Below are positions 4,328 to 44,000 of a DNA stretch of 64,000 nt, piece by piece; position 1 is the stretch's first letter, and each line of letters opens with the position of its first letter. Origin of the DNA: Pecten maximus (lineage: Eukaryota); the NCBI RefSeq assembly GCF_902652985.1, contig NC_047016.1, forward strand, positions 48,298,001 through 48,362,000, read 5' to 3'. The translations under genes and the position numbers were made by a program. A model generated the notes under the pieces. That model saw only the letters and a program-made list of their open reading frames with translations, made no database searches and was not told the origin of the DNA.

Positions 4328-4457
4328 NNNNNNNNNNNNNNNNNNNNNNNNNNNNNNNNNNNNNNNNNNNNNNNNNNNNNNNNNNNNNNNNNNNNNNNNN
4401 NNNNNNNNNNNNNNNNNNNNNNNNNNNNNNNNNNNNNNNNNNNNNNNNNNNNNNNNN
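4328..4457. other. Assembly gap (130 N)
   Basis: Run of N bases. Confidence 1.
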
Positions 4458-5944: not shown

Positions 5945-8900
5945 CTACTCTTTTTCCGACACGAAATGCTCAGAATATGCCACATGTTCCTGTATATTGT
6001 TCCGCGATCCTGTACCACATGTGAAATAATAGTCGCTATTTACACTAGCAGTACTTGTAACACTCCGATGCGTATCCCCGGGAAAACTCACATAGTTAGG
6101 CAAACAGTGATTTTCATCTTCTATTTTCCGATGCAAATCATGTTTCTTGTAGGAATTCCATCCAGATGGATTATTCATTAATTCATTGCAAGGATATTCG
6201 TCGGTATCGTCGATTTCATTTTCGTCATATTTCCGACATGCAACCTACAAATGATACACAAATGGAAAACAAGTGAAAAGGGACACTAAACAGTGACTGT
6301 AAGTTTTCTTTATCTTATACATCAAGTAATTGTATAATTATTAAAGCTATAAACCCCCCTTTTATTTGCCCAGATCATTTTCCCCTGATGTTATACGGGA
6401 GGACAGGGAATATCCACAAGCTTATCGGTGTGACATTAAAATAATTTTGTACTTTAGGATGAGGCAGAATATCATGTCTCGTCACGTTATCTTGCATTGA
6501 TGCAACATCAATATTAGATACAAGAGGGTAAACAGGATAAGAGAAAAAATAATAGATAATCCCTTGGAAGTGAGGGAGGGGGGTCCAACACACGTATTTG
6601 CCAACTTAAAAATATGTGTATGATATCCGTAATGATAACTTCAGTTAATACTCAACTAAATCAGTAATCGAAGGCATTATTACCTCCCCTGCTCGGGTAT
6701 TCCCTCCTTTGGGTGGACATAACTGTTGGTCAGACACCATACTCCTGGGCCCGTTTATGGCATTATCTCTTTGAAAAGAGCAGTATTCATTATCTTCTCT
6801 CTCCTTAGATCCCTCGGTTCCTGTTTCCTGGAGGTTCACAGCAGCATCGCAGTTCAGTATACATGGCACTCGTTGTGAATGCAGAGCATTATCTCCCTGT
6901 ACATATACATGTAATAGTTATTTACTACAAATGACGGTACTTATACGTTTGTTCATCTTAATATACAAAACATTAGGTCAATGGGTCAAGTCAGGTCAAT
7001 AGTTGAAAGGTCAAATGTCATGATGGGTGACAGATATTATATATTCATATCATATATAAATTTATATTTATCGATTTATCCTGTCCCATATGTTAAATAG
7101 AATGTATGCTATTATAGTGCAAATAACAAATGTATCATTTTGTTCACTTTCTTAGCCGAGGATGATTAAATAAGACATTTACTGTTTTATCTCCTAAGAA
7201 CTTATCATCAGAGGCTGCAATGCGGTGCCGTACTAATTTGCCTTTATGTGAAGTCGGACCAGCAGCTGCCCTATGTGTGTCCCCAGGAAGTGTATGTACA
7301 TAGTTCGACAAATTCTTTGTTCGATTTTCTTGTTCAGGACTGTTCTGCGTACAATTATTCCATCCAGAGAGATTTCGAACGGTTATATCTAAGTGGTTGA
7401 TATCTTTGTCTTCAATTGTATATTTGTCATCTTTTCGTAATGATATCTGTAACTGAAACGAAATTATTATATCTACAATACACAGAAAAAATATGGTTAT
7501 ATTCAGTTCGTTTTGTAAAACTAGTTTCTTGTGAGAATATTGTCAACTAATTGCTTATACGGGCCTTGAGGAATTAGAAATTTGGCAGAGAATACTGCTA
7601 AGTGCCAGTTCATAGGCCTTAGTATATTCGAAATTTCACTGTTTTAAAATTTTAGATAGAGATGTTTTCATTTGTCTGGTTAAATGCTACCTCTACGTCC
7701 TCCATGTCTTTTAATATGTTCTCAAAGTAGCTTATATCATCTGCCAACACGCTCCGGTCTCCTGGAGGAAAGCCCGCATCATCATCACTTGGCTCAATAG
7801 TCGGATGGGTTGTGTGCGAACTACCATAATCCTGCAATATTGTTTACATAATTTGTTTACAATGTGTGTTGCATTTACTCCATTTATTGTCATCTTAAAC
7901 GACACTGATGCCAGGCCAACCCAACGCTACCTTTGCAAAACAAACAAAAACAAAACAAACAAAATAATACAAACAAGAACACATAAAAAAAACTTCCAGT
8001 AATGGAAAAAGACCCAGTCTTCATTCTGTTTCTTATATTTTTATACCATGTACGCTTGAACATAATAGTAAAGTTTGCATGCGCAGTGTAATCCAGAGGC
8101 TTACTCGATTTGCACTCTTCTCCTTCTAGAATATATCTTCCGGTCACTCGACTTGTAGCTCTTCTGCTTCTGGAAGATCTTCTATCTCTTCCGTCTCGAA
8201 GTTGGAAGATTTATCTTCCAAGATGGTGGCGACCATGTTTAAATGTGCGAGTGATGAATTTCACTAGAGAAGGATTTATGACACATGCATGCACATGTTT
8301 GTGTCATAGTGTTTGAGAAAACTTAAAAACTTGTTTGTTTTAGGTTATGTTCTTCCGGTTTACTCGATTTACATATAACGGAATGCGATCTTCTGAGAAG
8401 GCTTTTCTTCCGAGAAGAGTGCAAATCGAGTTGGACATCAGTGATATTCCTGTACAGGGAACTGCATTGAAGTATAGCGGAAGGACCTACGAAACTAACG
8501 TTCAACGATGTTGATTGGTTCAATTTGTACCCCGTTTGCTTGTGTCGTTAAAACCCTTTGATGTCACTCTCACTGATTTCCTGTATGGCACGTATTATAG
8601 AAAGTTTCAAGTTAACACTGGCTAGTGCCCGGAATCGTTCTTGAGTCATTAAGCATTTAATTTTCGAGAAACAATTTTCAGCTGGATTTAGAATACACAG
8701 GCAAAATGTAAAGCCGACACCCTGCATATGAAAAAAACTGTGATATGACCCTCTCTGCGCTGTTGTGGTTATTGAACAGTTATCGACAACTACCACATAT
8801 TCCGGTAAGTCAGTCCTGAGATAAACTTGCTTCATTCCAGAAGTTCAAGTACGTGTTCGTGTCTAGAAGGCCCATCCACGAAATTGTAATATATAACACC

Positions 8901-11900
8901 ATTCAAACCTACAAGTAGATTTAAAGTTAAATTACGACCTTGGTGAAATTTGCCTATTTCAACACATGCACACCCTTCTTAGAGTGACCATAATTCGAGT
9001 TAGTAGAGGTTATTTTGAACCCACTCTCGTCCATAAATTTCACTTGACAAGGCCGTACCGTTTTGCAAAAATCCATATCGGCTTGTGTGTAAACCATATT
9101 ATACCGAAAATGCATGATTTAACCGTTTGTTTAAATTTATTGTTGAACGGAAACTGCTAAATTATTGCATTTTTACATATTTTTTTAAATACCATTAACA
9201 AACGTGATTATATAATATAAAAGACTAACCTTGAGGGATATATGTGTAGCATATAATACATGTACATTTTACGTTTAACCAACAACTTATTTTTGTAATT
9301 ATGAATGTGCTAAATATGAGAAAGTTGAAAATAATATATCCCGAAAATGGACTACTGTTTGTAGTCTGTTAGTACATTTCAATTAATGTGTTCATTTGAT
9401 TCTGTCAAGGACGTATATATTAGAATATTATAATATACAATTCCTTGATTTCCTTCATTCATTCATCATAGTAACTATCCACTCTGATTGGCCAGTTACT
9501 ACGATAAGATCAATGGGACAGTAATGAATCGTGTCAATAGTAACTATCCACTCTGATTGGCCAGTTACTACGATAAGATCAATGGGACGGTAATGAATCG
9601 TGTCAATAGTAACTATCCACTCTGATTGGCCAGTTACTACGATAAGATAATGGGACAGTAATGAATCGTGTCAATAGTAACTATCCACTCTGATTGGCCA
9701 GTTACTACGATAAGATCAATGGGACAGTAATGAATCGTGTCGATAGTAACTATCCACTCTGATTGGCCAGTTACTACGATAAGATCAATGGGACAGTAAT
9801 GAATCTCACGGCCTGTATTTCCGCTACGACACTGAAGAAATCTATACAATAATAATAATACAATATAATCTTTACAAACGATTTGATTGGTCGTTCAATC
9901 AAAAGTAGTAAACGGATGGGCGGAGCGATGTAACGTTATACTTCAGTACAGTTCCCTGTATCAGTCTATTGAATCATTTGACTTACATTTTTGAGGTCTG
10001 GCAATACAAAGACGTCAGTCGTGCTGCTACGTCTGTATGGTTCGTTCTCTCTGTGACCAGAAGTCCGACGCGAGTCTCCAGGAATATATACATAGTTCGA
10101 CAGACTGTCTTTATTCTTCCTCATTTCTGGCACGAGGTCGTATTTTTGGCATGATCTGTTTTTCTCTCCCTGATCATTACTGACCTCATTTTCGTCCGTT
10201 GTGTCTGCGTCAATGTTATTGTCTTTCCTACGCTGTACATACAACAACGAGTATTGATCATGATCAAGACAAATCCCTTGTTTATGTTTTTTTTATCTTA
10301 ACGTTAATTATATTGATAACAAAGATACTACTTTTCATTTTGGTATTAATTCACAATAATATATTTACATTTTGGTGGCAAAGCCACGATATAAACTAAG
10401 TAAAAAGATTTGCAGTCTATGTGACCATAATTGACACCCAAAACTTGACATAAATCTATGCTACGCATGGATATATTCACCAACCGGAACTACTTGTAAC
10501 TAACGTAAACAATCATGGCTCTATGAAAAAAGCCTAGGACTACGTCGTTTTTTATGTTAATTAAAAAGTATCAAAAAGAAACTTTATACAATATTGTTAC
10601 ACAAATAATAAAAAGAATTGAACAGACTGTGTGTTTTTTTCATATTATTTCAATGCACTTTTTTTGTTTGCCAATCTGCACGTGGCAAATGAATTTTGAA
10701 TAAATAGGCTGTTCTATTTGTCGAACCCCATTGACGAAGTTGCTGAATATTGGCATTTTTTATGCTAACTCAATTTTAATTTTCAGAAATAACAAAACGA
10801 ATATGTTGAGAACAGATAAACATGTCGAGAACAAATAAACATGTCATATTGTGCGGTTCGCAAAGCTCTGGCATCTATATCGACCATAGACACCAAAAAA
10901 ATTCTTAAATATTCATGATATCTTACCTCCAATTAATTTGTATTTGTCAAATTCCCTCAAATGTAGTACTTCCTAAAAAGGAACACAAATCTCACTAACG
11001 TTTGTGTTGCTTTTACAGAATACCAATTATCTTTATCCGAATGATGACTATTTTGATTTTGGTATTCATTTGCAATGATATATTCATAATATTCAAATTA
11101 CCGGACTGGTAGTACTTTCTACGAAGGGACACAACTCTCTATCAGACACCGCCATGCTGCCATCGGAGACGGTGTTGTCGGCCGGATGAAGACGACTATA
11201 TTCTGAATTCTTTATTTCCTCGTTTCCAGTTCCCCGCCTCTCGGTTTCCTGTTCGTTGCTATGCTGACTTGTTACTGAATCGTCTCTTCTGTTTGAATCA
11301 GAACTGTCGACTCCCTACAAACATGATATTGCTTGTGAAATTGAATTTGAATATCATGATAATCATAGAACCATCAATGAAATATCAAAGTGATGAAACA
11401 ATATGACAGTTATGAAAATCGAAACTGCCTGCCAGTCGTAGTAAAATTGGAAATATCTGTGTAAGTAACGTCATTGTCCCTGGAAGAGTGATAAGTCATG
11501 TTGGGGATTCCTTTGCGGATCCTTTGAAGGTTACTCAGAACCTACCTTTGTTATTTTTATGATTGGATTTGAATTTCAATATATTACAATTTACAGTTTA
11601 TCAGAACATGTATTTTATATGATATTTAAACATTTTACTTACATTGTAAGGTTCTCCCAGATCAATGTCAGTTAATGTATAGTGAGGTACATTTTGACTA
11701 CCGGCAGTTTCATTTGCAGCAGTAGCCTGAATCGTATCCTCAGGTATATTCTGTAAACAGTATTTCTGCATTTGTAGTTAGTGTTCATTGGCTAATTAAT
11801 TACATTTAATCACTTTTCGGTTTCTCATTAACTGGCTGTTGGTTAATGTTTAATGTTATTTATCTTTCTGGGTTTTTTTTTCAATTCTGTCTGTGTTACA

Positions 11901-14900
11901 TACAAATATTATAATAGGCGTAGGTTTCTATTAATCTAAGACATTAATTGTAATTTTGCACTACTTTAGTAATAAATCAAATATGAAAATAAACGACAGT
12001 TAGGTTGAAACCAACTTATCGAAAGTATAAATATAAAAAATATAAAAAACAAAATTGTAAAAAAAAAAGCCATGTTTAGATATATGGTGACGTCATTGAA
12101 TTCTTTTAAATGTGGCCATCGCCTATGTATTGATATATCGTTAAAATATCAAATTTCACACATGAATACATTTGGACTGCAGATTTCAATTCCTTCTTTG
12201 ACTGTATTGGATAGTCTGATGACCATCTGGACCAGGAGACTATTTTTCTATAAACATCATTAACTGAAGGCGTGACACGATAATATCGAAAGAGAGAGCT
12301 ACTGTATATATAAAGAGGTTTAGCCGAAAATTGTACGCCGAATCCCAGGCAAGATTCCGATACCCGGACTGTGAAATTTATTTTCACTTGAACTTAGGCT
12401 TTAACTTGATCAAAGATTGAACGTTTGATTTAGTTTATTATAGAAAGATTGACTATCATTCAGTTAAGCCTCATTAAGATTAGATAGATTTAGATCGGTC
12501 AGGGATTTCCCTCTATATTTATGTAATTAAACAGTTTTTGGAGCCCAGTCTTACGTGAAATTTGATTAGGGACGCACACAATCGTTAGATAATACTTGGT
12601 TCAATTTGTAAGCTGTTATTTGCTTCAGCGGTGACCACACACGTTATACCAGTAATATTCCGTTTGGTAAATAAAATGGACTATAATCATACAGCTTTCC
12701 CCATAGTCTATAGTACAGCCAAGTGTTTAGCCATGTGCCCGACCCGTCAATCTGTTGTAATTTTAGAGTATTAAGTAAACCGACCGATCGACTTAAAATA
12801 AATTTATTTTATTTCCTTGTTTATTTGGTCAAGGAAGAATAGTTATCTGTTGGAAACAGAAATATATACAGCTGTTAAAATTTAATACGCCAACCTTTAA
12901 GCGCACATTTAAATGACATTATAATTATCATCATCATCATTTTGTAGAAATGAACTTATTACCTTAATACGTAGGGTTAAATCTGTATACGTAGAAAATC
13001 TAGAAAATTCTCTTAACAACCAGTCTACTTCTGCATCAAAATGGTGGAAAACAGCAAAAGCAATCTTGAAAATTGATGACAAATCACCTATCATTCCTCC
13101 ATTAAATTGTAATAACTCCATTTTATTTCATCCACTTGATAAAGCTGAATGTCTTGTTGATTATTTTACATCTACATGTATTTCAACTTCTTCTGATTAC
13201 ATTGATCCACTGCCTCCTGTTCCAGAATCCCCAAATACTCTCAATAATATTTCATTTCAAGAACAGGAGATAGTGGATCAGCTGACTGTATTGAATGATA
13301 GAAAGCCTGCAGGATCTGATGAAATTGTACCTAAAATTATTAAACTCCTCTCACCATCACTAGTAACTCCCCTTACTTTATTATTCAATAAAACTATGTC
13401 TACAGGCTCTATTCCTCTGTCTTGGAAATTAGCTAATATTAATGCTATATATAAAGGTAAAGGTAATAAATGCGATGTATCCAACTATCGTCCTATTTCT
13501 ATCACATGTTGCTTTAGTAAGATATTAGAAAAAATTGTTTTTAAACATTTATATAATCACTTAATACAATATGAAATTATTACAAAATATCAGTCTGGAT
13601 TTATCCCAGGTGATTCTACTGTCAACTAACTACTATCATTGTATAATACAATTATTCAAAAATTAGATGAAGGACTTGAAATTAGATTAATATTCTGTGA
13701 TGTTAGCAAAGCATTTGATCGAGTCTGGCATCCTGGTTTACTATTTAAACTTGAAATGTATGGCATCAAAGGTAAGCTCCTTAATTGGTTTAAGGATTAT
13801 CTCTTAAACCGTTAACATAGGGTCATGACAGAAGGTTTCTGTTCATCACCATGTCAGGTAAGTGCTGGTGTCCCCCAGGGATCAGTCCTCGGCCCTTTTC
13901 TATTTCTTATTTACATCAATGATATCACTGAATGTATAACTAATGAAAAAAGATTATTTGCAGATGACACATCTCTCTTTAGAGTAATACATACCACTCC
14001 ATTAGATGCTGCCAACAGCCTATCTACTGACTTAGTAAATGTTGATGTATAGTCCAAAAAATGAGACATTAAGTTTAATCCAAATAAAACTGAATCATTA
14101 ACTTTTAGTCGTAAAAGGAATATAATTAGTCCTGATATTTTATTTCAAAATGAAATCGTATCTAATGTTACATCACATAAACACCTTGGTGTATTTTTCT
14201 CTCCAGATGGTAAATGGCATCATCACATTGACTATATCTATAATAAAGCATATAAACGTCTTAATTTACTAAAGTCAGTAAAATATAAAATGAGTCGAAA
14301 AACCTTAGTTACTTTATATACTTCTTATATTAGACCCATTTTAGAGTATGGTGATATTATTTTTGATAACTGTACGCAAGAAGAAGCAAAACTTCTTGAA
14401 TCAATACAAATAGAAGCTGCCCGTATTATTACAGGACTGCGTAAGGGAACCTCTCATTATAAACTTTACTGTGAACTTGGTTGGGACACCCTTGCTGCAA
14501 GACGGAAAAAACATAGATTAATACTCCTTTACAAAATTCTCTGTGGAACTACACCAACTTATCTGAATTAATTAATTGAGCCGTACTTTACTAATGCAAA
14601 TCCATATTTATTACGTAATGATAGAATGTTTACTATTCCATTATGCAGAACCAATATCTACGCAAAAAGTTTTATTCCAGCCACATAGAAAGATTATAAT
14701 GAACTTGCAGCAAGGTGTGACCTTACCAGTATTACATCAATTTATCAGTTTAAAAAACTTTTAAATATGCATTTAAGTGACATCAGATTCGAAAATATTA
14801 ATTATGCCTATTTTAATGCTGGTACCGGGAAAAACAATATACTTCTTTGTCAATTAAGAAATAATGTGAGTAATCTTAACTCTGACTTACACAGAGATCA

Positions 14901-17900
14901 TCTTTCTGAATTTCCAGTATTTACATGTGGAAACGCCCATGAAACAGTAGAACATTTTTTCTTAACTTGTAGTAAATATGAGGAACCCCGAAGAATACTA
15001 AGAGAAAAATTATTCAATTTAAATCATAATCATTATAATTTAAATATATTTTTGTCTGGCTGTGAAACTTGTAATAAACTAACTAACTTAAATATATTTG
15101 ATAATGTCATTGAGTTCGTTAGAGCCACCAATAGATTTTTACTATAGATTATACCCCATTATTGTTCTGCGATCTGCAATTTCTTTCTTTCCTTATTAAG
15201 CCCTATATATGGTCACCTACCCCTCCCCCCTTTTTCTGATTGGCATGAAATTTGTAATACTTAACATATTATAATAATATATTCCAAGTATTACATATGA
15301 AATATTACATAGCTCTGAATCAAATCAATTGATTATGAAATAAGTAAGGACAATATCAGTCCACTAATACCATTCTACTAAATTTCTTTTCTTCCATATT
15401 CTACAATATATTTGTCCATGACTGAATATAGTATCCATGACTTAATCCAAAAACTCATGGGTGGATGACCAATGGCTAGTAAGCCAGTATGGACTTTTTA
15501 GGTCTGTATCCCATAGGTGGATGGATTATGTCTTGGATAATGTATTCTAAATCCTCCAAAATTTATACAAATTGAAAATACATTTAAGACAAGCCAACTT
15601 TTATTAATAATAATCATAGAATTGTCCTTACTACTCAAATTACATATTCATACCATATTATATTATATATGTACTAAGTAATATCTTTATTGCATTGGAA
15701 TTACTTAATTCTATTAAATTAGCAATTTTATATAATTATATATGTATATACACTTTGTTACAAGGAGATAACTTATATAGGCATATTCCTGTTGTTAAAT
15801 CCTTTTCTTTATTGAATAAAATTTTGTGAAATTGAAAAAAAAAAAAAAATTGTAGAAACCAACAGCACCACGTTATATTGCCTGAACACTTTACTTTCTT
15901 TAAATCCTAGAGAGAAGAATGTTTATCCTTAATTATTCGGTACTGGCAACTAGTCAATTACAATTCTGTTACCTCAGATTCCCAGTAACTTGATTGGTTG
16001 TTGAAGCCAAAGGAGGACATCTCTTGGTCTGATGTCATTCCATTGTCTCCCGGCATGGCATTGTCTGCAGGATGTAGGCGACTATATTCAGAGTTTCTCA
16101 TTTCCTCGTTCATATTTTCCCACTGTTCAGCAGTTGTATCTTCGCTAGGCTTATGTGTTGAAGACGTGCGAAATGCACTTGAATTGACATCTTCCTGTAT
16201 ATAAAGTTGGTGTATAATTTAAAAATCTAATTTTAGTTCTAAAAATGGTAGATGATACAATAACTTAACGCTCAACATGCTAGAAGTGGGGTGACTAGAT
16301 CACCTGTTGTCAGTTTAATGAGACTGGGTGTGGTGTTCTGCTTTGTGCCTTAGGGAATATATTTCAGTGATGTAGCACTATAAACTCGGAATCAGTTCCG
16401 CGCTATTATAAGGAGGGAAGGATGGAAACATCGACTTACTATAGCCTCCCAAAACACCCGCTCACCACACATGCATATTACACACAGGGGAGGTCGTCCT
16501 TAAAAACCATAGCTGTTCATTTAAGCATTGATGTCATTTTTTTTAGTTTCATCGGGGTATGAAACAAATTTTGTTTGCAAATTGTATGAATCCGCGTAGC
16601 GGATTCTTACAGAAGTTTGCAAACAAAATTTGTTTCATACCCCGATGAAACTAAAAAAAGACATCAACGCTTATAATTAATTTTTGAAAATGATTTTCTA
16701 ATTTAAAACATGTTTCATGTACAATTTTACTGGTTTTAAATGGGATTCTTTTTCTCAAATCAATACGCAACGTCAATTGTCGTATTGTGACGTCACATTT
16801 TTCGCGCCATTCTCGGAATTTCTTTCATAGTAGAATGAAAAGAATTTTTCGACCAAACACATTTGAGTATTTACCATGAGAACAAAGAAAAATTAATTAT
16901 AGAACGTTAAACAGTACATACATCCAAACCTGGATTACAAAGCGAAGTAAAGCCTCAAAAGATACACACATTGGTAAGCAGTTCATTGTGAATGAAAGAT
17001 TATCAAAATGTTATATACCTTATTATTATTATCAAAGTCTATGCGCATTATTGACGTAAAACATTTGTAGATGATTAGAAACCATTTAATAAAGCCGCCA
17101 GACCAGGTCAATTATCATTAAAACAATTTTAACCCTTTGAGGGAATGTTCATATGTTGAGTAATTCAAAATCCTTATATAGTTCGATATTCCATTATCTC
17201 ATGACATTTTTACTAGTTGTGCGGTCTGATATTGAGAAGAAACACGTACACTATCAACAGTGGGGAGGTCAAAGTCATACGCTGCACAACGATTTCGGCA
17301 TTTGTTCCTATATAAAACAATAGTATAGAATAAATTTAGCACTTGAAGATAGTTATTTACTATAAATGAACATGACATTAGATGTTAGATATATAAAAAA
17401 AGAGATATGAAAATAATAACTGAATATCCTTCCCATTAAATATGAAATTAATATGATGATGCTACTTTATCCCGGTGTAAATATTAAAGATGTTAAATCT
17501 CCGATAAAGAGTAATGATGATCGATTGAAAACAAAGAATGGGCTGTTATATATTTGCATACCATACCGAAAGTTACATACATTGCCGCCATTCAAATGTT
17601 GGAGCTTCTCTTTTCATCTGTTTCATAGACATATATCTCTATACCGTGGGTATCAATTTGAGCAATTTTGGAACAAGAAGTGTATAAACTGTCAGCGATT
17701 TAATATCGATCACCGGTATTGTTCTTTTAAATAAATATAAATATAACTTACCGTTTGCAAACTACTGCGACCAGTATCGATAGTGGCAGCGCGAAAAGCG
17801 CGAAAAGTGCGTAAAGGTAGTCTGAAATTCAAGGAATTACAGTGTTGTGTATGTAGAGGTAGCAGTCCATCTAAATGAGGAAATGTGATTTTGAATGTCT

Positions 17901-20900
17901 AGTTGAATAACATGGCAACATCATAGATAATTGTTATCAATCAAATCAACAAAAATGGCAATTTCTCGTGATTCAGAGGGTCTTTATCGCTCACCTGGTT
18001 TCATGAAATATGAAACAAGAATGATGCTGAAGTATGATTTGTCGCCTGTCTTGCTATGTCAATATATCATACGCATTTTATATGGCTACATGAACATTGA
18101 TTTTATTGTAATTCTAAAAATGTAAGGTTTTTATGCCAAAAAGTGCATTGATCAATGAAATAGAATTTACTTTCGGCCCAACCCCATAGGCATGCTACCA
18201 CACACATATGAGCGGTATCCATTGCTTAGTTTCAGAGAAGAAATTGTTTATATCAATTTAGCCAAATTTACCCCTGTTGGCCGCGCCCTTCAGCCCTCTC
18301 ACCCCTTTATTTGTACAATTTTGAAAGCCTATCCAAAGGGGATGCTACCAGTCAAATATGATCGACATCCATCGCTTAGTTTTAGAAACAAAGTCGTTCA
18401 TATCAATTTAGCCAATTCAACCCCTTTTGGCCCCGCCCCTCATCCCCCGGAGGGTCAGTCCCACCATTTGTACAATTTTGAATCTCCTCCGTATAACAAG
18501 GCTACTAGTCAAATTTTGTTGAATTCTGACTAGTGGTTATGAAGAAGTCAACTGTCAATTGGACGGACGGACCAAGTAAGCTAATATAAATGAGATATCG
18601 ACATAAGAATTGGTAATGTACGTTAAAATGTAAATAAGACCAAAACGTACCTTTTTTCTCGATAGAATGTGAGGTAAAAATATTTCTCCATCCTGTAGGA
18701 AATATCATTTCAATGGATTTTAAAAGTAGAACACTGGGAATGCATTTATACGTATTGTATACATATCTAACAAAAATAAGTAATTCAAACATAAGTATAT
18801 GTTAATAACTTACTGGTATTACCATTATATAACTAGAGCATAGATTGCCTGGTCAATACTAGGACTGCCTTCTCAATGTAATATTTACAAAAGATATAGA
18901 AAATGAGTTTTACCTATTTACACCTCAGAATTAATATACCAGAAAGGATTTTTGACAGTAGTTAATACTTGGGAGCAACAATGATAATGTCAAGAAAAGT
19001 AATGGACACCCTATGGAACAAATGGAACAATCAAAATTCGTAGGTGTTCTCTAAAAGAACAACATCCATTATTGGCTGCATCTCCAACGGAGGAGTGCCA
19101 GTTTTGACTAGTCTACATTCCTCGGTATTAAGAATATTTTCAATGAAAGATTTTTTTTTATCATTTTTCTAAAGTATTTCATATTAAAATAGACGGGGAG
19201 TAAAAATGAGTCACAATGACTTCTGTTTTCAGTTTTTGGCATTCGTTTCATCTTATCTTTCAAAGTTTAAAAATTCTTTTGAAAATTGCATGACATTTCA
19301 CAAATATATCTATAATTTAACACCCCACCCTCCAGGCCGACTACCCGTGACAAATTTCTATAAAAAAAAAATCGAATGCTTTGAGTATCATACCATATGC
19401 AGATGACATTAAAATATACTTATCACAGTGGGGCCGCATAACGGCCTAAATTGGTACTCCTCTACTTGACCAAAGATACAATATAGATAATTACCGTATG
19501 GTAATGTACATGTCTCCCATCGGATGCCTCCTCTAGATACAGGTGATGCAATTGAGGCGCCAAAGACCCACGAATGATCCATTCGGGCTAGTTTCGCGAT
19601 CACAATCTTCATTTGTGTTTCCTTGGAGTAAGCAAAATCGTAATTGGCCTGTTGGTTAAAGCATATAAACTCATAAACGTAAACGAAGCTCAGATTTCAA
19701 TAGATTTCAAAATTTATTGTGAGGTACGCCCACATACATGGATTCATTGACTGAACGCACATTGTAATTGTCAAGTACAATACAAGAAAATTTTATGAAA
19801 TCGATTCAAATGTCTTAGCAGAATAACGATTATTTTTTAATTGTATTGACTATCATGCATTTAAATAAAATGATGTCAACAATGTTTACTGAGGTCATTT
19901 ATCTTAAAGTTGGTTTGATAATTAGTAACTGACATGTTTAAATGCCATGTCGAAAGAACCACACACAACTGGTATTTTGAGATCATATCATATTTTGAAA
20001 ATGAATGGATCCTGGCTAACAATATCATAACCATTCGTTAATCGCCAACTACACTGAATTACAAACCATACGTACTGTGCAGTCGACAACTCCTCGATCT
20101 TTGCAATCGTAGTCACGTGCGGTTACCTGGCACCAGTGATAGATGTATGTGATGGTTTTGTTTAACGAAGTCAGGTGTTGGATTGTAACCAGGAATTGAT
20201 GATGATCAGGGAATTCGGAAACAGTCACACTTTCGACACTTAATGAATCTGCATTAAAACATCTGTATCTTTAGTTGATGCCAGAGTAATTGATATTCTC
20301 ATGTTCATAGCATTTTCCCCGCTTTTTGCTATCTGATAACCTATTTTACCGAGTCAAACAGATATCGCCTTACAAATACATATGATATTCATCTTTCCAA
20401 CAAAAGGCTAAATTACCACCAACGAATCGGAAAATTAAGTGGCATATTAATGAGATTTAAAACATAAAAGTGACTTATTCAAACAATATTTAGTCGACCA
20501 ACTTTTTCTTAGATATATGTTTTTTCTTCATAAACATAGGTTTGAGCTGTCATTGTTTTGGCAGATTATTAAACAATGGCTTAAGAGAAGAGACCTGAAA
20601 GATATATATGAGAAATGTGATCAATTATATTGGGTTGAAACACTTTTTCTAACTAATTCAAAATTCTATTTTAGAGAAAGCGTTGTTTTTGGTCAGTACC
20701 CGTTTTCTCCTGATGCATACTTTGATGGTCGTCTTTCTTTCTAAATGTCTTATCATGAAGAATACTGAATAATCATCTTTCTTTTTATTATATTGTAGTC
20801 TTATATTGAATATGTGCTTAATCATTGTGCTAACTTTGCAATTACTGTATTATGATTGTTAAGTTGGCTTAATACCATTACCTTTTCCTGTGGGTTTTAT

Positions 20901-23900
20901 ATCAAGGTTTAAATGAAGGCTAGCACGTGACTTTCCAACAACAGTCAGTGACGATATGTCCGCATATAAGCCCATGGTATCGCCTTGTATATTCTCTATA
21001 ATAAGGGTTGATTTTACTGGATACGTCTTTGTCAGAAGTGCCAAGCTGGTATTTGATGATGAAAACAGCTGGAGCTCATATCCTTTCAGTATACCGTTGA
21101 TTGTATCCGGAGCAGGAGGCTGGAAGGGTTGAAATACCGCGCATAGAAATATATAATTTATTTCATGTCCGTCATGAACGTCAAGTACGTTTGTGTAAGA
21201 TGGTATGTTTCTTATATTTCATATTTCGAAATATTTCTATCAAAACAATAGAGAGTATACAGAGACTACACTGGATAACTAAAGATGTGTATTACTTACA
21301 CCATTCGACCAAATTTATATAAAATTGATATTGGGCTGATGAGTTATGGACCATTACACAAAAACATGTATACTGTATAGTGAGCATGTCATCACGGCTA
21401 CACAAGGCTCCACAAACAAACATGCATGCACGTCAATATGGTATATGTTATTCCTGCTTCGTGTTCATTGAAATTGGGGGGCCGCAGTGGCCGAGTGGTT
21501 AATGTGTCCCGACACTTTATCACTAGCCCTCCACCTCTGGGTTGCGAGTTCGAAACCTACGTGGGGCAGTTGCCAGGTACTGACTGTAGGCCGGTGGTTT
21601 TTCTCCGGGTACTCCGGCTTTCCTCCACCTCCAAAGCCTGGCACGTCTTTAAATGACCCTGGCTGTTAATAGGACGTTAAACAAAAACAAACCAAGCAAA
21701 ACAAAAATCATTGAAATTGGTTCACGTGTCAACAAAGTGTAGATCCATCTTATCATGGGTCTTCTTTTGATTACCATGGCAACCAAATGACGTCTAATGT
21801 CTTGGATGGAAAAAATTGTCATTGTGATTACCATTCGTAAAATCCCTTACATAAAATGAAAATCAGACAATGTATCTTTTTTGACAGATCAGAAACCTCC
21901 ATTATGCTTCCATACTAACGGATCCACATAAACCTTATGTGTCATCGTTAAGCTACACCACTTGACCTAGTTTAGATAACTGATGTAAGGATTGATGAGC
22001 TATATGCCATTATACTGATCTTTCCATCGCATCTTTAATATACTTACCTATGTGTTCACAGGAAATATTTTAGCTAAATTACATGTGAAAATGATTTCAA
22101 ATATGACTGAACCTACCTTGATATATATCGCTACGGTACAAGTTTGGTTTTTGCTCAGGTACATGGAGTATGATGTCGGAGTTCCTTGGGGTCCATACAT
22201 TGGAACTGACGATGAAATATGTTTATTCATGAAAATTGATAGAAATGGCATTATGCGTAACGGCAAATATACAAATGAAGATTGGGTGAAGAGAAGATTT
22301 ATTATAATTGAAAGGTTTAGTAGCAAGGCAAACAAATGGTTGGTAATGTAGTTCATATTACCGTCCTGCTTTGTTGAAAACTTTGCCGTACTACTTCGAG
22401 ACCAATATCTGCTTTCGGTAAAGCGACACAAGACTTGAATCATGTAGTTTTGGAAAGGCTTCAAAGGCTCTACCACATACTGTACATATTTGCTATTTTT
22501 CCAGAGCTGGAAAATTAATGAAAATCGATAATATTCATATGTATATAAATACAAGTATTCACGTTATTTTAAATTGCAACGTTGACGGAGAACAGGCAAA
22601 TACAACGAGTGAGCATATCGCTAGATGCATGGTTTGTCTCGTAAAAGTGTATTTGAATTTACAATTACGATCAAAATCTAGTTACACGACTAACAAAAGC
22701 ATATTCGCAATCTTCAAATTTACAGTAAATATATCGAAACAACACTATATTTGATAAAAATATTAACATTTCAAGGTGTCATCTTTCTTTCGGGACACCC
22801 GTTACATCAAGAATGTAACAAATTAGGTTTAAATGAACAGTTTATTATTCTAAATTGACTGTATTCATCTCTTAAAGTTTTGAAATGTGCTCATCTGTGA
22901 TAGTGTTGTTTTTAATGCGTTGATGTGTGCTCGTGTTTCTTTCGTATTGAAAAGTATTGTATGTCTTAGTTATTTCAAAGTCTTGTTGTGTGTCTTTCAT
23001 ATGGAAAAATACTGCTGTGTGCCTTTTATATTGAAAAGTTCTGTTTGTCTTTTATATTGAAAAGTGTTGTGTGTCTTTTATATTGAAAAGTGTTGTGTGT
23101 CTTTTATATTGAAAAGTATTGTGTGCCTTTTATATTGAAAAGTAGTGTGTGCCTTTTATATTGAAAAGTGTTGTATGTCTTTTATATTGAAAAGTGTTGT
23201 GTGTCTTTTATATTGAAAAGTGTTGTATGTCTTTTATATTGAAAAGTGTTGTGTGTCTTTTATATTGAAAAGTGTTGCTGAGCCTTTTATATTGAAAAGT
23301 GCTGTGTGTCTTTTATATTGAAAAGTGTTGCTGTGCCTTTTATATTGAAAAGTGCTGTGTGTCTTTTATATTGAAAAGTGTTGTGTGTCTTTTATATTGA
23401 AAAGTGCTGTATGTCTTTTATATTGAAAAGTGTTGTATGTCTTTTATATTTGTATTGAAAGGTGTTGTTGTGTGTCTTTTGTATTAAATGTTTTGCTATG
23501 TGTCTTTTTTATAGAATGGTGTTGCTGTGTCTTTTGTATTTGTATTAAAATGTGTTGTTGTTTTTTATGTGTCTTTTGTATGGAAAAGTATTGTGTTGTA
23601 CGTATGTGTCTTTTGTATTGAAAAGTGTAGATGTGTGCTTGTGTGTTGTTGTACAATCAAAATACTAGACATATATATCAAGATGTCTCGCTTTTTACAC
23701 GACATCAGTATCCGACGTCTGTATAAAACATATATACCTCTGTCACACTTTGTGACGTGTTGTATGTGATATTGCAGGATATTCCTGCTTTGTAGTATGC
23801 AGGGTTATTTGGGAAATACCAAGTCAGTGTTGCTGTGGTAGATGTAGTCGATTTAACTGTGAATCTCCGTAATGGCCCCAATTGCTCTGGAAAAGAACAA

Positions 23901-26900
23901 CAGAAGGTCATAACAAGGTGCATGCATCTAAGGTCTCTGAATAGCTTAGCATTGTATCTTCATCTTGAATAGTAGGATCTTATGAAATATAAAAGCAATT
24001 AATTAGTTATTTATCTATAAGTTGATAATAATTTTTTTTTTTCTTTACACATTTTACCAGTCTTTAAGAATAGCTAAGACAGGAATATTAGCGCAGAGGG
24101 TCATAGTTGCCTAACATTGTTCAAATTAAGGTAGATATCGTTCCACATGGCGTGGTAGATATCGGCTGAGGCAAATTACCATAAAAGCCATAAATACCAG
24201 TCATGGCGTGGTAGATATTGGCCAAGGTGAATTACCATAGAAATCATACCAGTCAGGGCGTGGTGGTAGATATTGGTTCAGGCAAGTAACCATAGAAACC
24301 ATATCGGTCAGGGCTTGGTAGATATTGGCTTAGATGAATTATCATAGAAGCCATACATACCATTCAGGGCGTGGTGGATATTGGCTCAGGCAAGTAACAA
24401 TAGAAACCATACAGGTCAGGTCGTAGTGGTAGATATTGGCTCAGGCAAGTAACCATAGAAACCATATCGGTCAGGGCGTGGTAGATATTAGCTCATGCAA
24501 GTAACCATAGAAACCATACCGATCAGTGCGTGGTAGATATTGGCTCAGGTGAATTACCATAGAAATCATACCAGTCAGGGCGTGGTAGATATTGGCTCAG
24601 GCGAATAATTATATAAACACCGGTCAGAGCGTGGTTGATTTTTTCAAAAGTGTATATTTACATTCATCGTTAAGGGCGTGGTGAATATCTGCCTAGATTA
24701 ATAACTATAGATACCTATCAGGGCGTGATAGATATGGTTCCAGCCATATATCTTAATATGATATATATATTGGGTTAGACCACATGAACTTGGCATGGCT
24801 TCCGAATACATGGTCCACGTAAATGCATTGTGTGTCATATACTATATATACATGGTGATCAGACATAAAATTACAGCCATCGGATATGTCAAGAGAGATA
24901 TCTGATAGGAATGGTGGTAAAACCTGTTTACTTCCCCATATACTGTTGATAAAAAGAAGTAAATACTTGAATCTTATCTAAAAAAAACAAATCACAAAAT
25001 TAACATTTTATGTAGATGACACGACCTACCAATAGTGATATTTGTGGTGATGTTGTAATCGAAAGAGGATGTACCATAGGGACTTCTTCCCTCAATATGT
25101 ATTGTGTATCGTTCATCTCTTATAGCATCTGCAAGTAGGCAAGTCGTCTGGATCTCCTTCTCATGAATGTCCTGACACTTTCTCGTTAGCTGTGGATGTA
25201 TAAGTAGTTAGATACTAGTAATGTCTGTAATAGGAAGAAGTGTAAAATAGCCTTCCGGTCTTGGGGCCTCTCTCGTACATCCTACCACTGAGCAATAAGA
25301 GAATTCCCCATTATTTAAGCTAGTACACTTCTCATTCTTTCACAAAGTCTTCGCTCCAGATGACAACCACAACCAAGGTTCCTTGGCTCCATGAAAGCCA
25401 CTCTCAGTCTCTTATAACTTAAACTTGCATTGGTCAACGGCACTAAATCTGTTATGGTGTAAAGACACATGAAAATCATTCTTCAGCAATTATGTCTAAA
25501 TAATATATATCTTGTTATCTTATTGAGATTTGAATGTAAAAAGGTGACATATCTTTAAACAGGAGCTACTTACAAATCTGTAACTATTGTCTTCGTCATT
25601 GAAGTCGACACAATGTTGTGATTTCCTTACACTGTTCGTACAGGTACAGCTGTAGGATGCAAGTTTAATTATCGTTAAATTCAATGAATTTATTTAATCA
25701 TCTGAGGGTTTCTAGCCTTGATACGACAGGAAGAAATATTTTCCTAGAAAAAATATTCACTATGATTACTATAACAGTGATAGGTCTAATCAGCAAAGGT
25801 GAAGATAGTACTAATAATTTTTTAACCTTGCGTAAATATTGATTCCTATAATCTTATCAAAGTTGATAAACCTATTCCTAGATTCGAATATATGTTTTCC
25901 TTATAAAATGTTTAACTTTATAAAATGTTAGCATGCGACTAATCCTGTTGGAATTGTTTATACACTGCATTAGATGATAATCGAGAGAATTGAAATGTAT
26001 TGGTACAAACCGTGAAGGATCTTCTTCCTCCGCTGACATGCGGTATTGCAGTGTCCATTCCACGCATGAATCATACATGGAAAAATAACATTGTACACCG
26101 CCATTGCTGATGATACAGTGGAAGTACAGTGGATCGGGAGGTACATCTATATAAACAGGCAAATCAATTGTGTCAATGTACTTTCATCACGGTCATTATC
26201 GGTATACTGTGAACATATATGTTTTAGAGAGTTTCATATTTTAGCGTGTTTACTGCATTTGCATTAGCTCATACGGGCTTCAATAAATGAACTTTTTGTT
26301 ACAGAAAACCAGCAAGGAGGAAATTTATCTCACTGTGTTAGCATCTGAATTATCACAATACCAGTATATAAAAACCAACAAAAATTAACCAAATTAATGC
26401 AGTTTGGTAATATTTACGGAAAAATTAATTTAGCTATTTTCGCTTCCAATGATACCGTGAAATAGGATCTCTGTGAATATAACTTGTATTATCAATTTGT
26501 CTTTTTTATTCACATACAAGAAGAAAGTGCCAACATGACCACGAAATACCGAAAATGAATCCCCGCGAACTACTATCGACTTGGTCAGACGCAAAATATT
26601 AACCCCAGCGAAATCAAATAACTATACTTTACAATATATACACAAATACTAGGCCGATATATTGAGTTTAATCTCTTACATACCAACAAATAAATTATTC
26701 AGCGAAAGGACAATAACAAAAAATACCAAACAAATACTGATGGATAGAACAGAGGAAACATGTCTCATGAATATATTTATTGTTTCTAAACTTATTTTCA
26801 GCTTCAATTAATAAGCAAGACTGTAAACCAACTTATTTTCGCGTGCCTTAAAAAAAATCACGTATTTCGCGTGCGATTGAAATCCGCGAAATAGTTTCAA

Positions 26901-41000: not shown

Positions 41001-44000
41001 GACTTGTAAATAGAACTTGTAAATATGTGAATAAACTGTAAATAGGAAACTGTCGGATTATCGTTGTGGGATAACCAAACCAGTGGCTCCGTCACATTAT
41101 GTACGGAAATCATACGAAAACTTAACTAACCCTTCAAACCCCATATGCATTTATTGTCTATATTTTTGAGATATTAAAAGTGATGTACTTATAACGTACT
41201 TATTTTAGCGTACTTAAATTTTCGCGCTTAACCGAATTCATCAGATTAGCGCGGTGACACTTTACAGAAACTACAATTACAACATAATTTAGCGGAAATC
41301 TATAATAAGATTATCGTCATAATATATATGTTTGCAGTTATAATGACGTCATATATATTTGTGTTTAACAAACAGCCTTCAATGCGACTTTTAATCTCTC
41401 TTTGTATCTCCGTTAGGTTGAACATGACCTGCTCAAGAAAAGCAAGAAAACAGGAAAAGTGCCGTTTTTGCAGTACAACGGAGAGGAAGTATCGGATAGC
41501 GAGTTCATCCTAGAGTTCCTCAGTAAGGAAAAGGACTTTGACCTTTATAGAGATCTTACACCTGAACATATTGGAATCGGCAGGGCCTTCCAGAAAATGG
41601 CGGAGGAAAATACATACTGGTATGCTGACATTGTATCACAATATGTATAAATAGCCCCCAACGGGGTGCCATCTTGGTGTTTATCTCTGTATATTTCGGT
41701 ATAAAGACTGAAGTAGTATATGGCAAACACGAGGAGTCCGTGCAGGAACGTGGAAAGCATATATCTGCTGTGTCACACTTAGTGTGGTGAGAGGCGACTA
41801 ATTGTGGAGACCCCCTGCAGGGCTAGGGGTGGGTTCTCATTGGACATTGAAGAGACCAAAATCAAAATAGATGTTCTGCCCCCGTTAAATTACTTGCGAT
41901 CTTAAATAATCATTGCTATGTCTTTCTTGCTTTGTCTTCTTAGTCAAGGTGTCACCTTGACGCCTGTCCTCATATAACACTGGCTGTTAATTTGTGTCTC
42001 CTAGACACCCGTTCTCATATAATTTATGTCTCCTAGACACCCGTTCTCATATATCACTGGCTGTTAATTTGTGTCACCTTGACGCCTGTCCTCAAATAAC
42101 CCTGGCTGTTAAATTGTGTCTCCTAGACACTCGTTCTCATATAACAGTTGTAACCACGGTGACGTCAATAGCCCACAATAGCCCACAATCAAAATGGCTG
42201 TCTCATTTAAAGGGTCATGCTCTCTGTAATGTAACTCAACGGATTTGACCTAGATTAGTATGGCAGTATTGTCGATGAAGCAGAAGACGCTAAATCTTCC
42301 GGAACACACGATCTTGTTTTGTCTCATTGGACTTTGTCAAGGATCTCCATGCAAATCTATATTGTAGCCGTATTCGCTCTCGTTTATCGATTTTGAGTTA
42401 GAATTACGTATTTGCATTAGTGTATGTATTTTCTGTTAATCTCTTAATATATGAAATGAATAAGAAATGTAAATACAAGTATAAAACCTCCCAAATTTTA
42501 ATGTTAACAGTCTTGAGACATTATTATAAAAACTGTGTTTGGTAACATACAATATGGAAGTTATAATATATAAGTGTATATTTTTTCTAGGTGCTTTGTG
42601 GCGGATAGGTGGGTTCTTGACAAAACCAAAACAGCACTGAAAGAGTCCGGTATTCCTCGGTTTCTATGGTAGGTCATGGATTACACCGATTCGTTGATTC
42701 TCGGAAAAGGTATAACGTTTGATCCCACAAAGTTTTATAATATCAAAATGATGGCAAAACCATGAAAGTGATCATAGCAGTACAAACTTGAAATCAATTA
42801 GTGGAAACCAAGTAGGTGATCGTAGCAATACAAAACAAGAAATTGATTAGGGGAAACCATGTAGTTCATCATAATAATACAAAACTAGAAATTGATTAGA
42901 GGAGACCATGCAGTTCATCATAATAAAACAAAACAAGAAATTGATTAGGGGAAACCATGTAGTTCATTATAATAAAACAAAACTAGAAATTGATTAGGGG
43001 AAACCGTGTAGTTGATCATAATAATACAAAACTAGAAATTGATTAGGGGAAACCATGAAGTTCATCATAATAATACAAAACTAGAAATTGATTAGAGGAG
43101 ACCATGTAGTTCATCATAATAAAACAAAACAAGAAATTGATTAGGGGAAACCATGAAGTTCATCATAATAAAACAAAACTAGAAATTGATTAGGGGAAAC
43201 CGTGTAGTTGATCATAATAATACAAAACTAGAAATTGATTAGGGGAAACCATGAAGTTCATCATAATAAAACAAAACTAGAAATTGATTAGGGGAAACCA
43301 TGAAGTTCATCATAATAAAACAAAACAAGAAATTGATTAGGGGAAACCATGTAGTTCATTATAATAAAACAAAACTAGAAATTGATTAGGGGAAACCGTG
43401 TAGTTGATCATAATAATACAAAACTAGAAATTGATTAGGGGAAACCATGAAGTTCATCATAATAATACAAAACTAGAAATTGATTAGAGGAGACCATGTA
43501 GTTCATCATAATAAAACAAAACAAGAAATTGATTAGGGGAAACCATGAAGTTCATCATAATAAAACAAAACTAGAAATTGATTAGGGGAAACCATGTAGT
43601 TCATTATAATAAAACAAAACTAGAAATTGATTAGAGGAGACCATGAAGTTCATCATAATAAAACAAAACAAGAAATTGATTAGGGGAAACCATGTAGTTC
43701 ATCATAATAATACAAAACTAGAAATTGATTAGGGGAAACCGTGTAGTTCATCATAATAATACAAAACTAGAAATTGATTAGGGGAAACCGTGTAGTTCAT
43801 CATAATACAAAACTAGAAATTGATTAGGGGAAACCATGTAGTTCATCATAATAAAACAAAACTAGAAATTGATTAGGGGAAACCGTGTAGTTCATCATAA
43901 TAAAACAAAACTAGAAATTGATTAGGGGAAACCGTGTAGTTCATCATAATAAAACAAAACTAGAAATTGATTAGGGGAAACCGTGTAGTTCATCATAATA

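What the first reader, a model, noticed from the sequence alone, without database searches (positions are those of the whole stretch)
5945..16194. Cytokine-receptor tail assembled from duplicated phase-0 exons, each carrying one tyrosine module
Seen: all eight tail exons begin in phase 0 and the seven internal ones also end in phase 0. Two paralogous exon families alternate. Type B: 16194-15973 [22 protein letters not shown], 11314-11102 [25 protein letters not shown], 6896-6684 [22 protein letters not shown]; the last two are both 213 nt and start GGA G. Type C: 10232-9987 [13 protein letters not shown], 7452-7183 [21 protein letters not shown], 6244-5945 [20 protein letters not shown]. Conservation is concentrated on the Tyr motif while the flanks diverge, and B and C mostly share Y-x(3,4)-P-[AG]-D. 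Inference: a signalling tail grown by exon duplication, with docking-site number tunable by in-frame exon skipping. I do not know this design from gp130 or Domeless, whose tails are mostly encoded by one or a few exons.
Basis: partly seen in the sequence, partly recalled or inferred. Interest (0 to 1): 0.85.

Follow-up and report, generated by a model that had tools for sequence, protein, structure and literature searches.

The report
Scallop cytokine-receptor tail built from duplicated exons
The stretch is the 3' half of an annotated but unstudied king-scallop gene for a gp130/LIFR-like cytokine receptor, whose long intracellular tail is built from eight in-frame exons, six of them old duplicates that each preserve one short tyrosine motif; exon skipping to tune the tail has not been shown.

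Summary
The six quoted exons translate as stated. All have AG/GT splice sites. Their boundaries match, base for base, the public protein XP_033761732.1 (Pecten maximus LOC117343474, 1184 aa, 22 coding exons).

- **Intron phases:** the 13 ectodomain, transmembrane and juxtamembrane introns are mixed. The last eight are all phase 0.
- **Exon families:** there are two real families. B (x3) carries [12 protein letters not shown]. C (x3) carries LSNYVxxPGDTHR. Two further exons are orphans.
- **Order:** B, X1, B, C, X2, C, B, C. This is not a strict alternation.
- **Selection:** the B1/B2 12-codon core has 7 synonymous and 0 non-synonymous differences. The flanks are near saturation. This indicates old duplication with purifying selection on the motif, not gene conversion.
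- **Orthologues:** only two were found, both in scallops. Mizuhopecten has four B-C pairs, one pair recently duplicated, and two B copies have lost the Tyr. Argopecten has eight tandem 20-aa B cores and one C.
- **Ectodomain:** Ig plus a cytokine-receptor homology region plus FN3. The best solved relative is LIFR (E 4.8e-6).
- **Motifs:** there is no YxxQ and no classic Box1.

Phosphotyrosine docking is inferred, not shown. A multi-exon, tyrosine-per-exon tail is already known from PECAM-1. I rate this a new variant of a known kind, of moderate interest.

The parts
15973..16194 (-). Tail exon 15 (B1, 222 nt, phase 0-0); core [12 protein letters not shown]
11643..11750 (-). Tail exon 16 (X1, 108 nt, phase 0-0); orphan, weakly C-like (NVPHYTLT)
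   Evidence: unique in the genome
11102..11314 (-). Tail exon 17 (B2, 213 nt, phase 0-0); [12 protein letters not shown] ... AVSDRELCP
9987..10232 (-). Tail exon 18 (C1, 246 nt, phase 0-0); [13 protein letters not shown]
7691..7831 (-). Tail exon 19 (X2, 141 nt, phase 0-0); orphan acidic exon, donor GTAGCA
   Evidence: unique in the genome
7183..7452 (-). Tail exon 20 (C2, 270 nt, phase 0-0); [14 protein letters not shown]
6684..6896 (-). Tail exon 21 (B3, 213 nt, phase 0-0); degenerate core [11 protein letters not shown] ... VSDQQLCP
5945..6244 (-). Last coding exon 22 (C3, 297 nt plus stop); [13 protein letters not shown]; AATAAA 401 and 475 nt downstream
17250..17307 (-). Juxtamembrane exon 14 (58 nt, phase 2 to 0); motif YDFDLPTVD, conserved in three scallops, sits where Box1 would be
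17752..17821 (-). Transmembrane exon 13
18651..29367 (-). Exons 1-12: signal peptide (29367-29292), Ig (28136-27861), cytokine-receptor homology region (26146-26011, 25649-25574, 25189-25030, 23886-23738, 22506-22362 carrying YWSRSS), two FN3-like domains (22205-22117, 21119-20882, 20248-20076, 19648-19495) and stalk (18692-18651)

Best explanation
The stretch is the 3' half of Pecten maximus LOC117343474, a single-copy receptor found only in scallops. Its architecture is signal peptide, Ig, cytokine-receptor homology region, two FN3-like domains, transmembrane helix and a tail of about 570 aa. This is the gp130/LIFR 'tall' topology. The tail is acidic and rich in Ser, Thr, Asn, Gly and Pro. 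It is encoded by eight symmetric phase-0 exons. Six of them descend from two ancestral exons by old duplications. Symmetric phase is what makes such duplications frame-safe. Only a core of about 12 residues per module is kept by purifying selection: B = N-S-E-Y-S-R-L-H-P-x-D, C = L-S-N-Y-V-x(1,2)-[ILF]-P-G-D-[TS]-x-R. Inferred, not shown: after ligand-driven dimerisation an associated tyrosine kinase phosphorylates these tyrosines. They then act as repeated docking sites for SH2 or PTB proteins (STAT, SHP-type phosphatase, SOCS). Valency is set over evolutionary time by module gain and loss. That happened by exon duplication in Pecten, by B-C pair duplication in Mizuhopecten, and by a 20-aa tandem repeat in Argopecten.
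For: The exon chain and phases are fixed by an exact protein-to-genome map and by canonical splice sites. The B and C families are supported at z 5.8-14 against shuffles. The B1/B2 core has 7 synonymous differences over 7.5 sites and 0 non-synonymous over 28.5 sites, while flank pN is 0.51. C cores have pN 0.13-0.21 against about 0.5 in the flanks. No intron-to-intron similarity remains, so the duplications are old. The six-module profile hits only three representatives among 1.84 billion: the gene itself, Mizuhopecten (6 stretches, E 2.4e-23) and Argopecten (4 stretches, E 4.3e-5). Most three-species invariant tail residues lie in the juxtamembrane motif, the B1 and B2 cores, the VSDxELCP block and the C1 core. 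Mizuhopecten units 3 and 4 are 70.5% identical over 146 aa, and Argopecten has eight 20-aa repeats. The ectodomain profile hits LIFR at 4.8e-6 across the WSXWS region, IL-31RA at 1e-3 and LEPR at 7e-3. The Atlas neighbours are EBI3, CRLF1 and IL-12B. STAT loci exist in this genome.
Against: There is no YxxQ motif and no PxxPxP Box1. JAK-specific FERM families were not detected exon-wise, and that search had no working control. The AlphaFold model was unusable at pLDDT 30, so family membership rests on weak sequence similarity. Two Mizuhopecten B copies lack the Tyr. YSRL is also a perfect YxxPhi sorting signal. Phosphorylation and partners are entirely inferred.
Confidence: 0.6

Rival explanations
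1. The B core is mainly a tyrosine-based sorting signal (YxxPhi, here Y-S-R-L, resembling the Y-Q-R-L type). Repeated copies drive clathrin/AP-2 endocytosis and lysosomal delivery, making the protein a ligand-clearing or decoy receptor rather than a signalling one.
For: Nearly all Tyr-bearing B cores read Y-[SN]-R-L and one reads Y-C-S-F; all fit YxxPhi. There is no YxxQ and no classic Box1. Argopecten amplified just the 20-aa core eight times. That YxxPhi with Arg at +2 is favoured by the AP-2 mu2 subunit is my background knowledge and was not tested here.
Against: The conserved footprint runs from -3 to +7 around the Tyr, longer than a four-residue sorting signal needs. C cores are equally conserved but mostly do not fit YxxPhi (YVHT, YVLT, YVQH). 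A conserved juxtamembrane motif sits at the Box1 position.
Confidence: 0.2
2. The tail is inhibitory. B cores (S-E-Y-S-R-L) and some C cores (S-N-Y-V-Y-I, S-S-Y-V-C-I) are ITIM-like and recruit SHP-type phosphatases, so the receptor dampens JAK/STAT or other tyrosine-kinase signalling.
For: Three P. maximus tyrosines, two Mizuhopecten tyrosines (Y660 and Y744) and nine Argopecten tyrosines fit [SIVL]xYxx[IVL] (contexts). YxxQ is absent. An earlier scan note (s1-802715) made the same reading independently.
Against: Ser at -2 is the least typical ITIM residue. Most C cores fail the consensus. The conserved H-P and P-G-D residues after the motif are not ITIM features. No partner was tested.
Confidence: 0.2
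3. Module number is regulated within one animal by in-frame skipping of tail exons, as in PECAM-1.
For: All seven internal tail exons are 0-0 symmetric, so any skip keeps the frame. X2 has a weak donor, GTAGCA. There is a PECAM-1 precedent (PMC2132561).
Against: Symmetry is a precondition of exon duplication and needs no splicing explanation. Only one P. maximus sequence sits in the 90% identity cluster. No transcript-derived fragments were found. There are no RNA data.
Confidence: 0.15
4. Part of the model is an annotation artefact: the orphan exons X1 and/or X2 are not used, or are used only in minor isoforms.
For: X1 and X2 have no significant relative in the Mizuhopecten or Argopecten tails or among the other exons. 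Their support is limited to open frame, splice sites and the gene model.
Against: Both have canonical sites in phase 0 and are unique, non-repeat sequence. X1 scores above 498 of 500 shuffles against the C-module profile.
Confidence: 0.15

Closest known systems
gp130 / LIFR group of class I cytokine receptors ('group 2' of PMC1963337)
   Same: Ig, cytokine-receptor homology region, FN3 domains and a transmembrane helix in that order. A profile hit to LIFR spans the WSXWS region. There are conserved Cys pairs C128-x8-C137 and C166-x9-C176. Domain exons are bounded by phase-1 introns. Small separate transmembrane and juxtamembrane exons are followed by a long Tyr-bearing disordered tail.
   Different: WSXWS is degenerate (YWSRSS). 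There is no PxxPxP Box1 and no YxxQ or YxxV sites. There are two rather than three membrane-proximal FN3 domains. The tail is split into eight exons, whereas to my knowledge most of the gp130 and LIFR tail is one terminal exon (not tested here). Relatives were found only in Pectinidae.
Drosophila Domeless
   Same: An invertebrate receptor with a cytokine-receptor homology region plus FN3 domains, feeding JAK/STAT.
   Different: No detectable sequence similarity was returned. The Dome homology region is encoded by a single exon (PMC1963337), while here it is split in the vertebrate-like way. Dome uses a YxxQ-type STAT site (my knowledge), which is absent here.
PECAM-1 (CD31) cytoplasmic domain
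   Same: The tail is encoded by many short exons (9-16). Tyrosines sit in separate exons, and loss of one exon changes signalling (PMC2132561). It is the nearest precedent for the tyrosine-module-per-exon design.
   Different: PECAM-1 is an IgSF adhesion receptor, not a cytokine receptor. Its exons are not recognisable duplicates of two families. Alternative splicing is demonstrated for PECAM-1 and untested here.
ITAM exon repeats of the CD3 zeta chain (from memory, not checked here)
   Same: Repeated Tyr signalling motifs that arose by exon duplication within one tail.
   Different: The motif differs (YxxL-x6-8-YxxL), as do the receptor class and the fixed copy number.

Membership tests
Class I cytokine receptor, gp130/LIFR type | Significant sequence similarity of the ectodomain to the cytokine-receptor homology region of known members | tested here: met
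   A profile of three scallop proteins against PDB gives LIFR 4.8e-6, 6.6e-6 and 3.8e-5, IL-31RA 1e-3, LEPR 7e-3 and gp130 0.1. Atlas neighbours are EBI3, CRLF1 and IL-12B at 0.90-0.92. The support is weak but consistent.
Class I cytokine receptor, gp130/LIFR type | Two conserved cysteine pairs in the first half of the homology region | tested here: met
   C128-x8-C137 and C166-x9-C176 are invariant in three species. Disulfide connectivity itself cannot be tested here.
Class I cytokine receptor, gp130/LIFR type | WSXWS motif at the end of the homology region | tested here: inconclusive
   YWS[RKQ][SI]S aligns with the WSKWS of LIFR. The first W-S is invariant and the second Trp is absent.
Class I cytokine receptor, gp130/LIFR type | Box1 (proline-rich JAK-binding motif) shortly after the membrane | tested here: inconclusive
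   There is no PxxPxP. The motif YD[FI][DE]LPx[VI][DE] is conserved 10-12 residues after the transmembrane helix, on its own 58-nt exon. JAK binding is not testable here.
Class I cytokine receptor, gp130/LIFR type | YxxQ STAT3-type docking tyrosines | tested here: not met
   None of the 22 tail tyrosines of P. maximus, 14 of Mizuhopecten or 11 of Argopecten has Gln at +3.
Class I cytokine receptor, gp130/LIFR type | Fold of the ectodomain (two FN3-like halves forming the cytokine-binding elbow) | tested here: inconclusive
   AlphaFold2 on the three-sequence alignment gave mean pLDDT 30.2, so no fold search was run.
ITIM-bearing inhibitory receptors | [SIVL]-x-Y-x-x-[IVL] motifs that recruit SHP or SHIP phosphatases | tested here: inconclusive
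   B cores fit (SEYSRL), as do C1 (SNYVYI), Argopecten C (SSYVCI) and the first Mizuhopecten C (SNYEDV). The other C cores do not. Phosphatase recruitment is not testable here.
PECAM-1-like alternatively spliced multi-exon tails | Tail encoded by several short exons, each with its own tyrosine | tested here: met
   Eight exons of 108-300 nt, each with at least one Tyr.
PECAM-1-like alternatively spliced multi-exon tails | Documented isoforms that skip tail exons | not testable with these tools
There is a single sequence in the 90% cluster and no fragments were found.

The most novel reading that the evidence does not exclude
This scallop-restricted gp130/LIFR-like receptor is the still-unidentified surface receptor feeding the bivalve JAK/STAT (interferon-like) pathway. 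The number of its two docking motifs is an evolvable, and possibly splice-regulated, dial of signal strength. It would be reset in each scallop lineage by exon duplication, exon-pair duplication or a 60-nt coding minisatellite.
Probability: 0.15. Interest if true: 0.7.

Novelty: new variant of a known kind. Interest (0 to 1): 0.45.

Why it matters
Bivalves have JAK and STAT and an interferon-like antiviral response, but the oyster antiviral review I consulted names no upstream cytokine receptor (PMC5869526). A scallop receptor of gp130/LIFR type gives a concrete candidate with short peptides that can be tested. Its tail consists of a few sharply conserved tyrosine cores embedded in freely diverging sequence. 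It is also a clean natural example of how the number of linear motifs in a disordered signalling tail changes. The same motif was multiplied in three genera by three different mutational routes. The gene itself is already annotated, though as 'uncharacterized'. The multi-exon tail design has a precedent in PECAM-1. The value is therefore moderate.

Tried and rejected
- **Exon structure in orthologues:** Whether Mizuhopecten and Argopecten modules are separate phase-0 exons is unknown.
- **Transcript-derived fragments:** a search with the last exon found nothing.
- **Wider orthologues:** the full-length search and the alignment search returned only the three scallop proteins. The length and word limits of that tool mean this is not proof of absence.
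- **Structure:** the AlphaFold2 model was too poor to use (pLDDT 30), so no fold search was run.
- **Tail look-alikes:** none in the ESM Atlas or in PDB.
- **JAK:** the JAK-specific FERM families PF18379 and PF17887 were not found exon-wise, and the controls did not ring either, so this is uninformative.
- **Exonised repeat idea for X1 and X2:** rejected, because both are unique in the genome.
- **Gene conversion as the cause of the identical B1/B2 core:** rejected, because synonymous sites are saturated.
- **B and C as one family:** not supported over whole exons (z about 0). They share only the Y...P-[AG]-D core.
- **Perfect (B-C)x4 alternation with X1 a decayed C and X2 a decayed B:** X1 is marginal and X2 unsupported.
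- I redid it from the window file.
- **Joined model:** Exons were searched one by one by reference, and the full-length steps used the public record P0001 that a search returned.
- **Complex prediction:** not used, because I name no specific partner.
Full report
**What is there.** The window is chromosome piece C2:48,298,001-48,362,000 of a 918,306,378-bp, 3,983-contig assembly. The proteins it encodes are recorded as Pecten maximus.

Each is preceded by a pyrimidine-rich tract ending in AG. The five internal ones are followed by GTA, and the last ends at a stop codon. Every length is a multiple of three.

I aligned the six exon translations (A1) and searched a profile of them against 1.84 billion representative proteins. 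Only three came back:
- P0001, XP_033761732.1, 'uncharacterized protein LOC117343474' of P. maximus, 1184 aa.
- P0002, a Mizuhopecten yessoensis protein that its depositors named 'Leukemia inhibitory factor receptor'. The longer RefSeq form is P0004, XP_021375262.1, 1252 aa.
- P0003, XP_069122190.1 of Argopecten irradians, 956 aa.

**Gene model.** P0001 maps at 100% identity to 22 coding exons on the minus strand, from 29367 to 5945. Each intron has exactly one canonical GT-AG solution.

Intron phases are 1,1,2,0,1,0,1,0,1,0,1,1,2 through the ectodomain, the transmembrane exon (17821-17752) and the juxtamembrane exon (17307-17250). All eight remaining junctions are phase 0.

The tail exons are:

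| Exon | Coordinates | Length |
|---|---|---|
| B1 | 16194-15973 | 222 nt |
| X1 | 11750-11643 | 108 nt |
| B2 | 11314-11102 | 213 nt |
| C1 | 10232-9987 | 246 nt |
| X2 | 7831-7691 | 141 nt |
| C2 | 7452-7183 | 270 nt |
| B3 | 6896-6684 | 213 nt |
| C3 | 6244-5945 | 300 nt with stop |

Only 4 of the other 13 introns are phase 0, so eight in a row is not expected by chance. Symmetric phase is, however, simply the condition under which an exon can be duplicated without breaking the frame.

Exons were searched one at a time by reference, and the full-length steps used the public record returned.

**Two exon families, two orphans.** I compared Smith-Waterman scores against 1000 shuffles:
- B1-B2 z 14, B2-B3 z 7.2, B1-B3 z 5.8.
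- C2-C3 z 12.3, C1-C3 z 9.2, C1-C2 z 6.6.
- All B-C pairs about 0. X1 and X2 reach at most 2.4 with anything.

blastp agrees. A translated search of the window finds no further copies. Searches of the whole genome find B and C modules only in this gene, which is single-copy.

The order along the mRNA is B, X1, B, C, X2, C, B, C, so the alternation is imperfect. X1 scores slightly above chance against a C-module profile built from three species (2 of 500 shuffles reach it). X2 fits neither family. Neither orphan is repeat-derived.

B and C do share the short pattern Tyr, three or four residues, Pro-[Ala/Gly]-Asp in five of the six modules.

**Selection on the motifs.** The evidence comes from within the genome and from the three species:
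- In the 12-codon B1/B2 core ([12 protein letters not shown]) there are 7 synonymous differences over 7.5 synonymous sites and no non-synonymous difference over 28.5 sites. In the flanks the non-synonymous proportion is 0.51.
- The duplication is therefore old, and the identity of the cores is due to purifying selection, not gene conversion.
- C cores show pN 0.13-0.21 against about 0.5 in the flanks.
- Tail introns share no similarity with each other, which fits an old origin.
- Across the three species the ectodomain is 50-58% identical and the tail 30-36%.
- Most residues invariant in all three tails fall in four short blocks plus the juxtamembrane motif: [19 protein letters not shown] and S-YV-IPGD.

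**Module number varies among scallops.**
- Mizuhopecten has B,C,B,C,B,C,B,C. Its last two B-C units are 70.5% identical over 146 aa (E 1.5e-72), so this is a lineage-specific duplication of a pair. Both of those B copies have lost the tyrosine (DEFRLLP, DNSRLHP).
- Argopecten has eight head-to-tail 20-aa copies of EETRSSEY[SN]RLHPTGHG[LV]PG, then one full B and one C.
- Best matches between species are not collinear. For example, Pecten C2 pairs best with the first Mizuhopecten C (E 2e-12). This suggests gain and loss of modules rather than a fixed array.

**What kind of receptor.**
- Pfam sees an I-set Ig domain and weak fn3.
- A profile of the three proteins against all PDB sequences puts LIFR first (E 4.8e-6). 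The alignment runs from the end of the first half of the homology region, through the second half, into the next FN3, and places YWS[RKQ][SI]S on the WSKWS of LIFR. IL-31RA, leptin receptor and gp130 follow.
- Language-model neighbours are EBI3, CRLF1 and IL-12 p40 clusters.
- Cys pairs C128-x8-C137 and C166-x9-C176 are invariant.
- The domain exons are bounded by phase-1 introns.
- The topology (N-terminal Ig, homology region, FN3 modules, transmembrane helix) is that of 'group 2' receptors as defined in PMC1963337.
- Against full membership: WSXWS is degenerate, there is no PxxPxP Box1, and none of the tail tyrosines has Gln at +3.
- At the Box1 position, on its own 58-nt exon, sits the motif YD[FI][DE]LPx[VI][DE], conserved in all three species.
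- The AlphaFold2 model was unusable (mean pLDDT 30).

**How it most likely works.** Shown:
- The gene structure.
- The duplication history.
- The motif-level constraint.
- The copy-number variation between genera.

Inferred:
- The tail has about 19% acidic residues, about 40% Ser/Thr/Asn/Gln/Gly/Pro and 17% hydrophobic residues. I read it as a disordered scaffold.
- The Tyr cores would be phosphorylated by a receptor-associated kinase and would bind SH2 or PTB proteins.
- The conserved footprint, from -3 to +7 around the Tyr, is of the size such domains read.
- STAT genes are present in the genome. JAK-specific domains were not picked up exon-wise, but that search had no working control. JAK and STAT are reported from oysters (PMC5869526).
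- The sign of signalling is open. SEYSRL fits the loose ITIM consensus, as an earlier scan note also remarked (s1-802715). YSRL also fits a YxxPhi endocytic signal. These are the main rivals.

**Exon skipping.** Every internal tail exon could be skipped in frame, but I obtained no evidence that any is. The 90% identity cluster holds a single P. maximus sequence. No transcript-derived fragment was found.

**Comparison with the known.** To my knowledge, gp130 and LIFR encode almost all of the tail in one terminal exon. I could not find a paper in the library to cite for this.

A tail spread over many short exons, with tyrosines in separate alternatively spliced exons, is known from PECAM-1. Its exons 9-16 encode the tail, and the exon 14 tyrosine changes function (PMC2132561).

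The library holds no paper on this scallop gene.

**Verdict.** This is an annotated but uncharacterised, scallop-restricted gp130/LIFR-like receptor with a modular, duplication-built tail. I class it as a new variant of a known kind, of moderate interest.

Noticed in passing
window 12925-15144 (+): Decayed non-LTR retrotransposon, antisense to the receptor gene, inside the 4.2-kb intron between B1 and X1. Reverse-transcriptase pieces in several frames match Pfam RVT_1 at 2e-5 and 3e-6. It explains why this intron is the longest in the tail.
   Followed up: partly
window about 9468-9805: Tandem array with a 69-bp period, copies 98-100% identical, in the intron between C1 and X2. It reads as repeated open frames on the minus strand but is intronic.
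   Followed up: partly
window 30281-31573: Satellite-like array of about 1.3 kb, open in several minus-strand frames (repeating DFHHYHDFIIKDF-type peptides). It lies 0.9-2.2 kb upstream of the receptor's start codon at 29367.
   Followed up: no
window 21384-21653 (+) and 31744-32019 (+): Two copies of the same dispersed element (shared open frame ...[26 protein letters not shown]...). One lies in a receptor intron and one upstream of the gene.
   Followed up: no
window 33349-34569 (-): The neighbouring gene upstream on the same strand has an exon matching Pfam Hisat_C, the histidine N-acetyltransferase C-terminal domain (1.3e-12).
   Followed up: no
window 59367-63811 (+): Activin/TGF-beta type receptor kinase gene: an Activin_recp ectodomain exon (1.1e-6) and kinase exons (1e-21). 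An earlier scan note (s1-802777) reports a minisatellite at its ectodomain splice donor.
   Followed up: no
window 41417-41647 (+): Exon with a GST_N_4 / Tom37-like domain (4.9e-15), belonging to a metaxin/FAX-type gene between the receptor and the activin receptor.
   Followed up: no
window 52544-53287 (-): DDE transposase remnant (DDE_Tnp_1 2.2e-8, DDE_Tnp_4 2.8e-6).
   Followed up: no
G000:C2:45973656-45975499 and G000:C2:27098225-27098335: Two STAT_bind-positive loci on the same chromosome as the receptor gene. The nearer one is about 2.3 Mb away.
   Followed up: no
window 4328-4457: A run of 130 N about 1.5 kb downstream of the stop codon.
   Followed up: no
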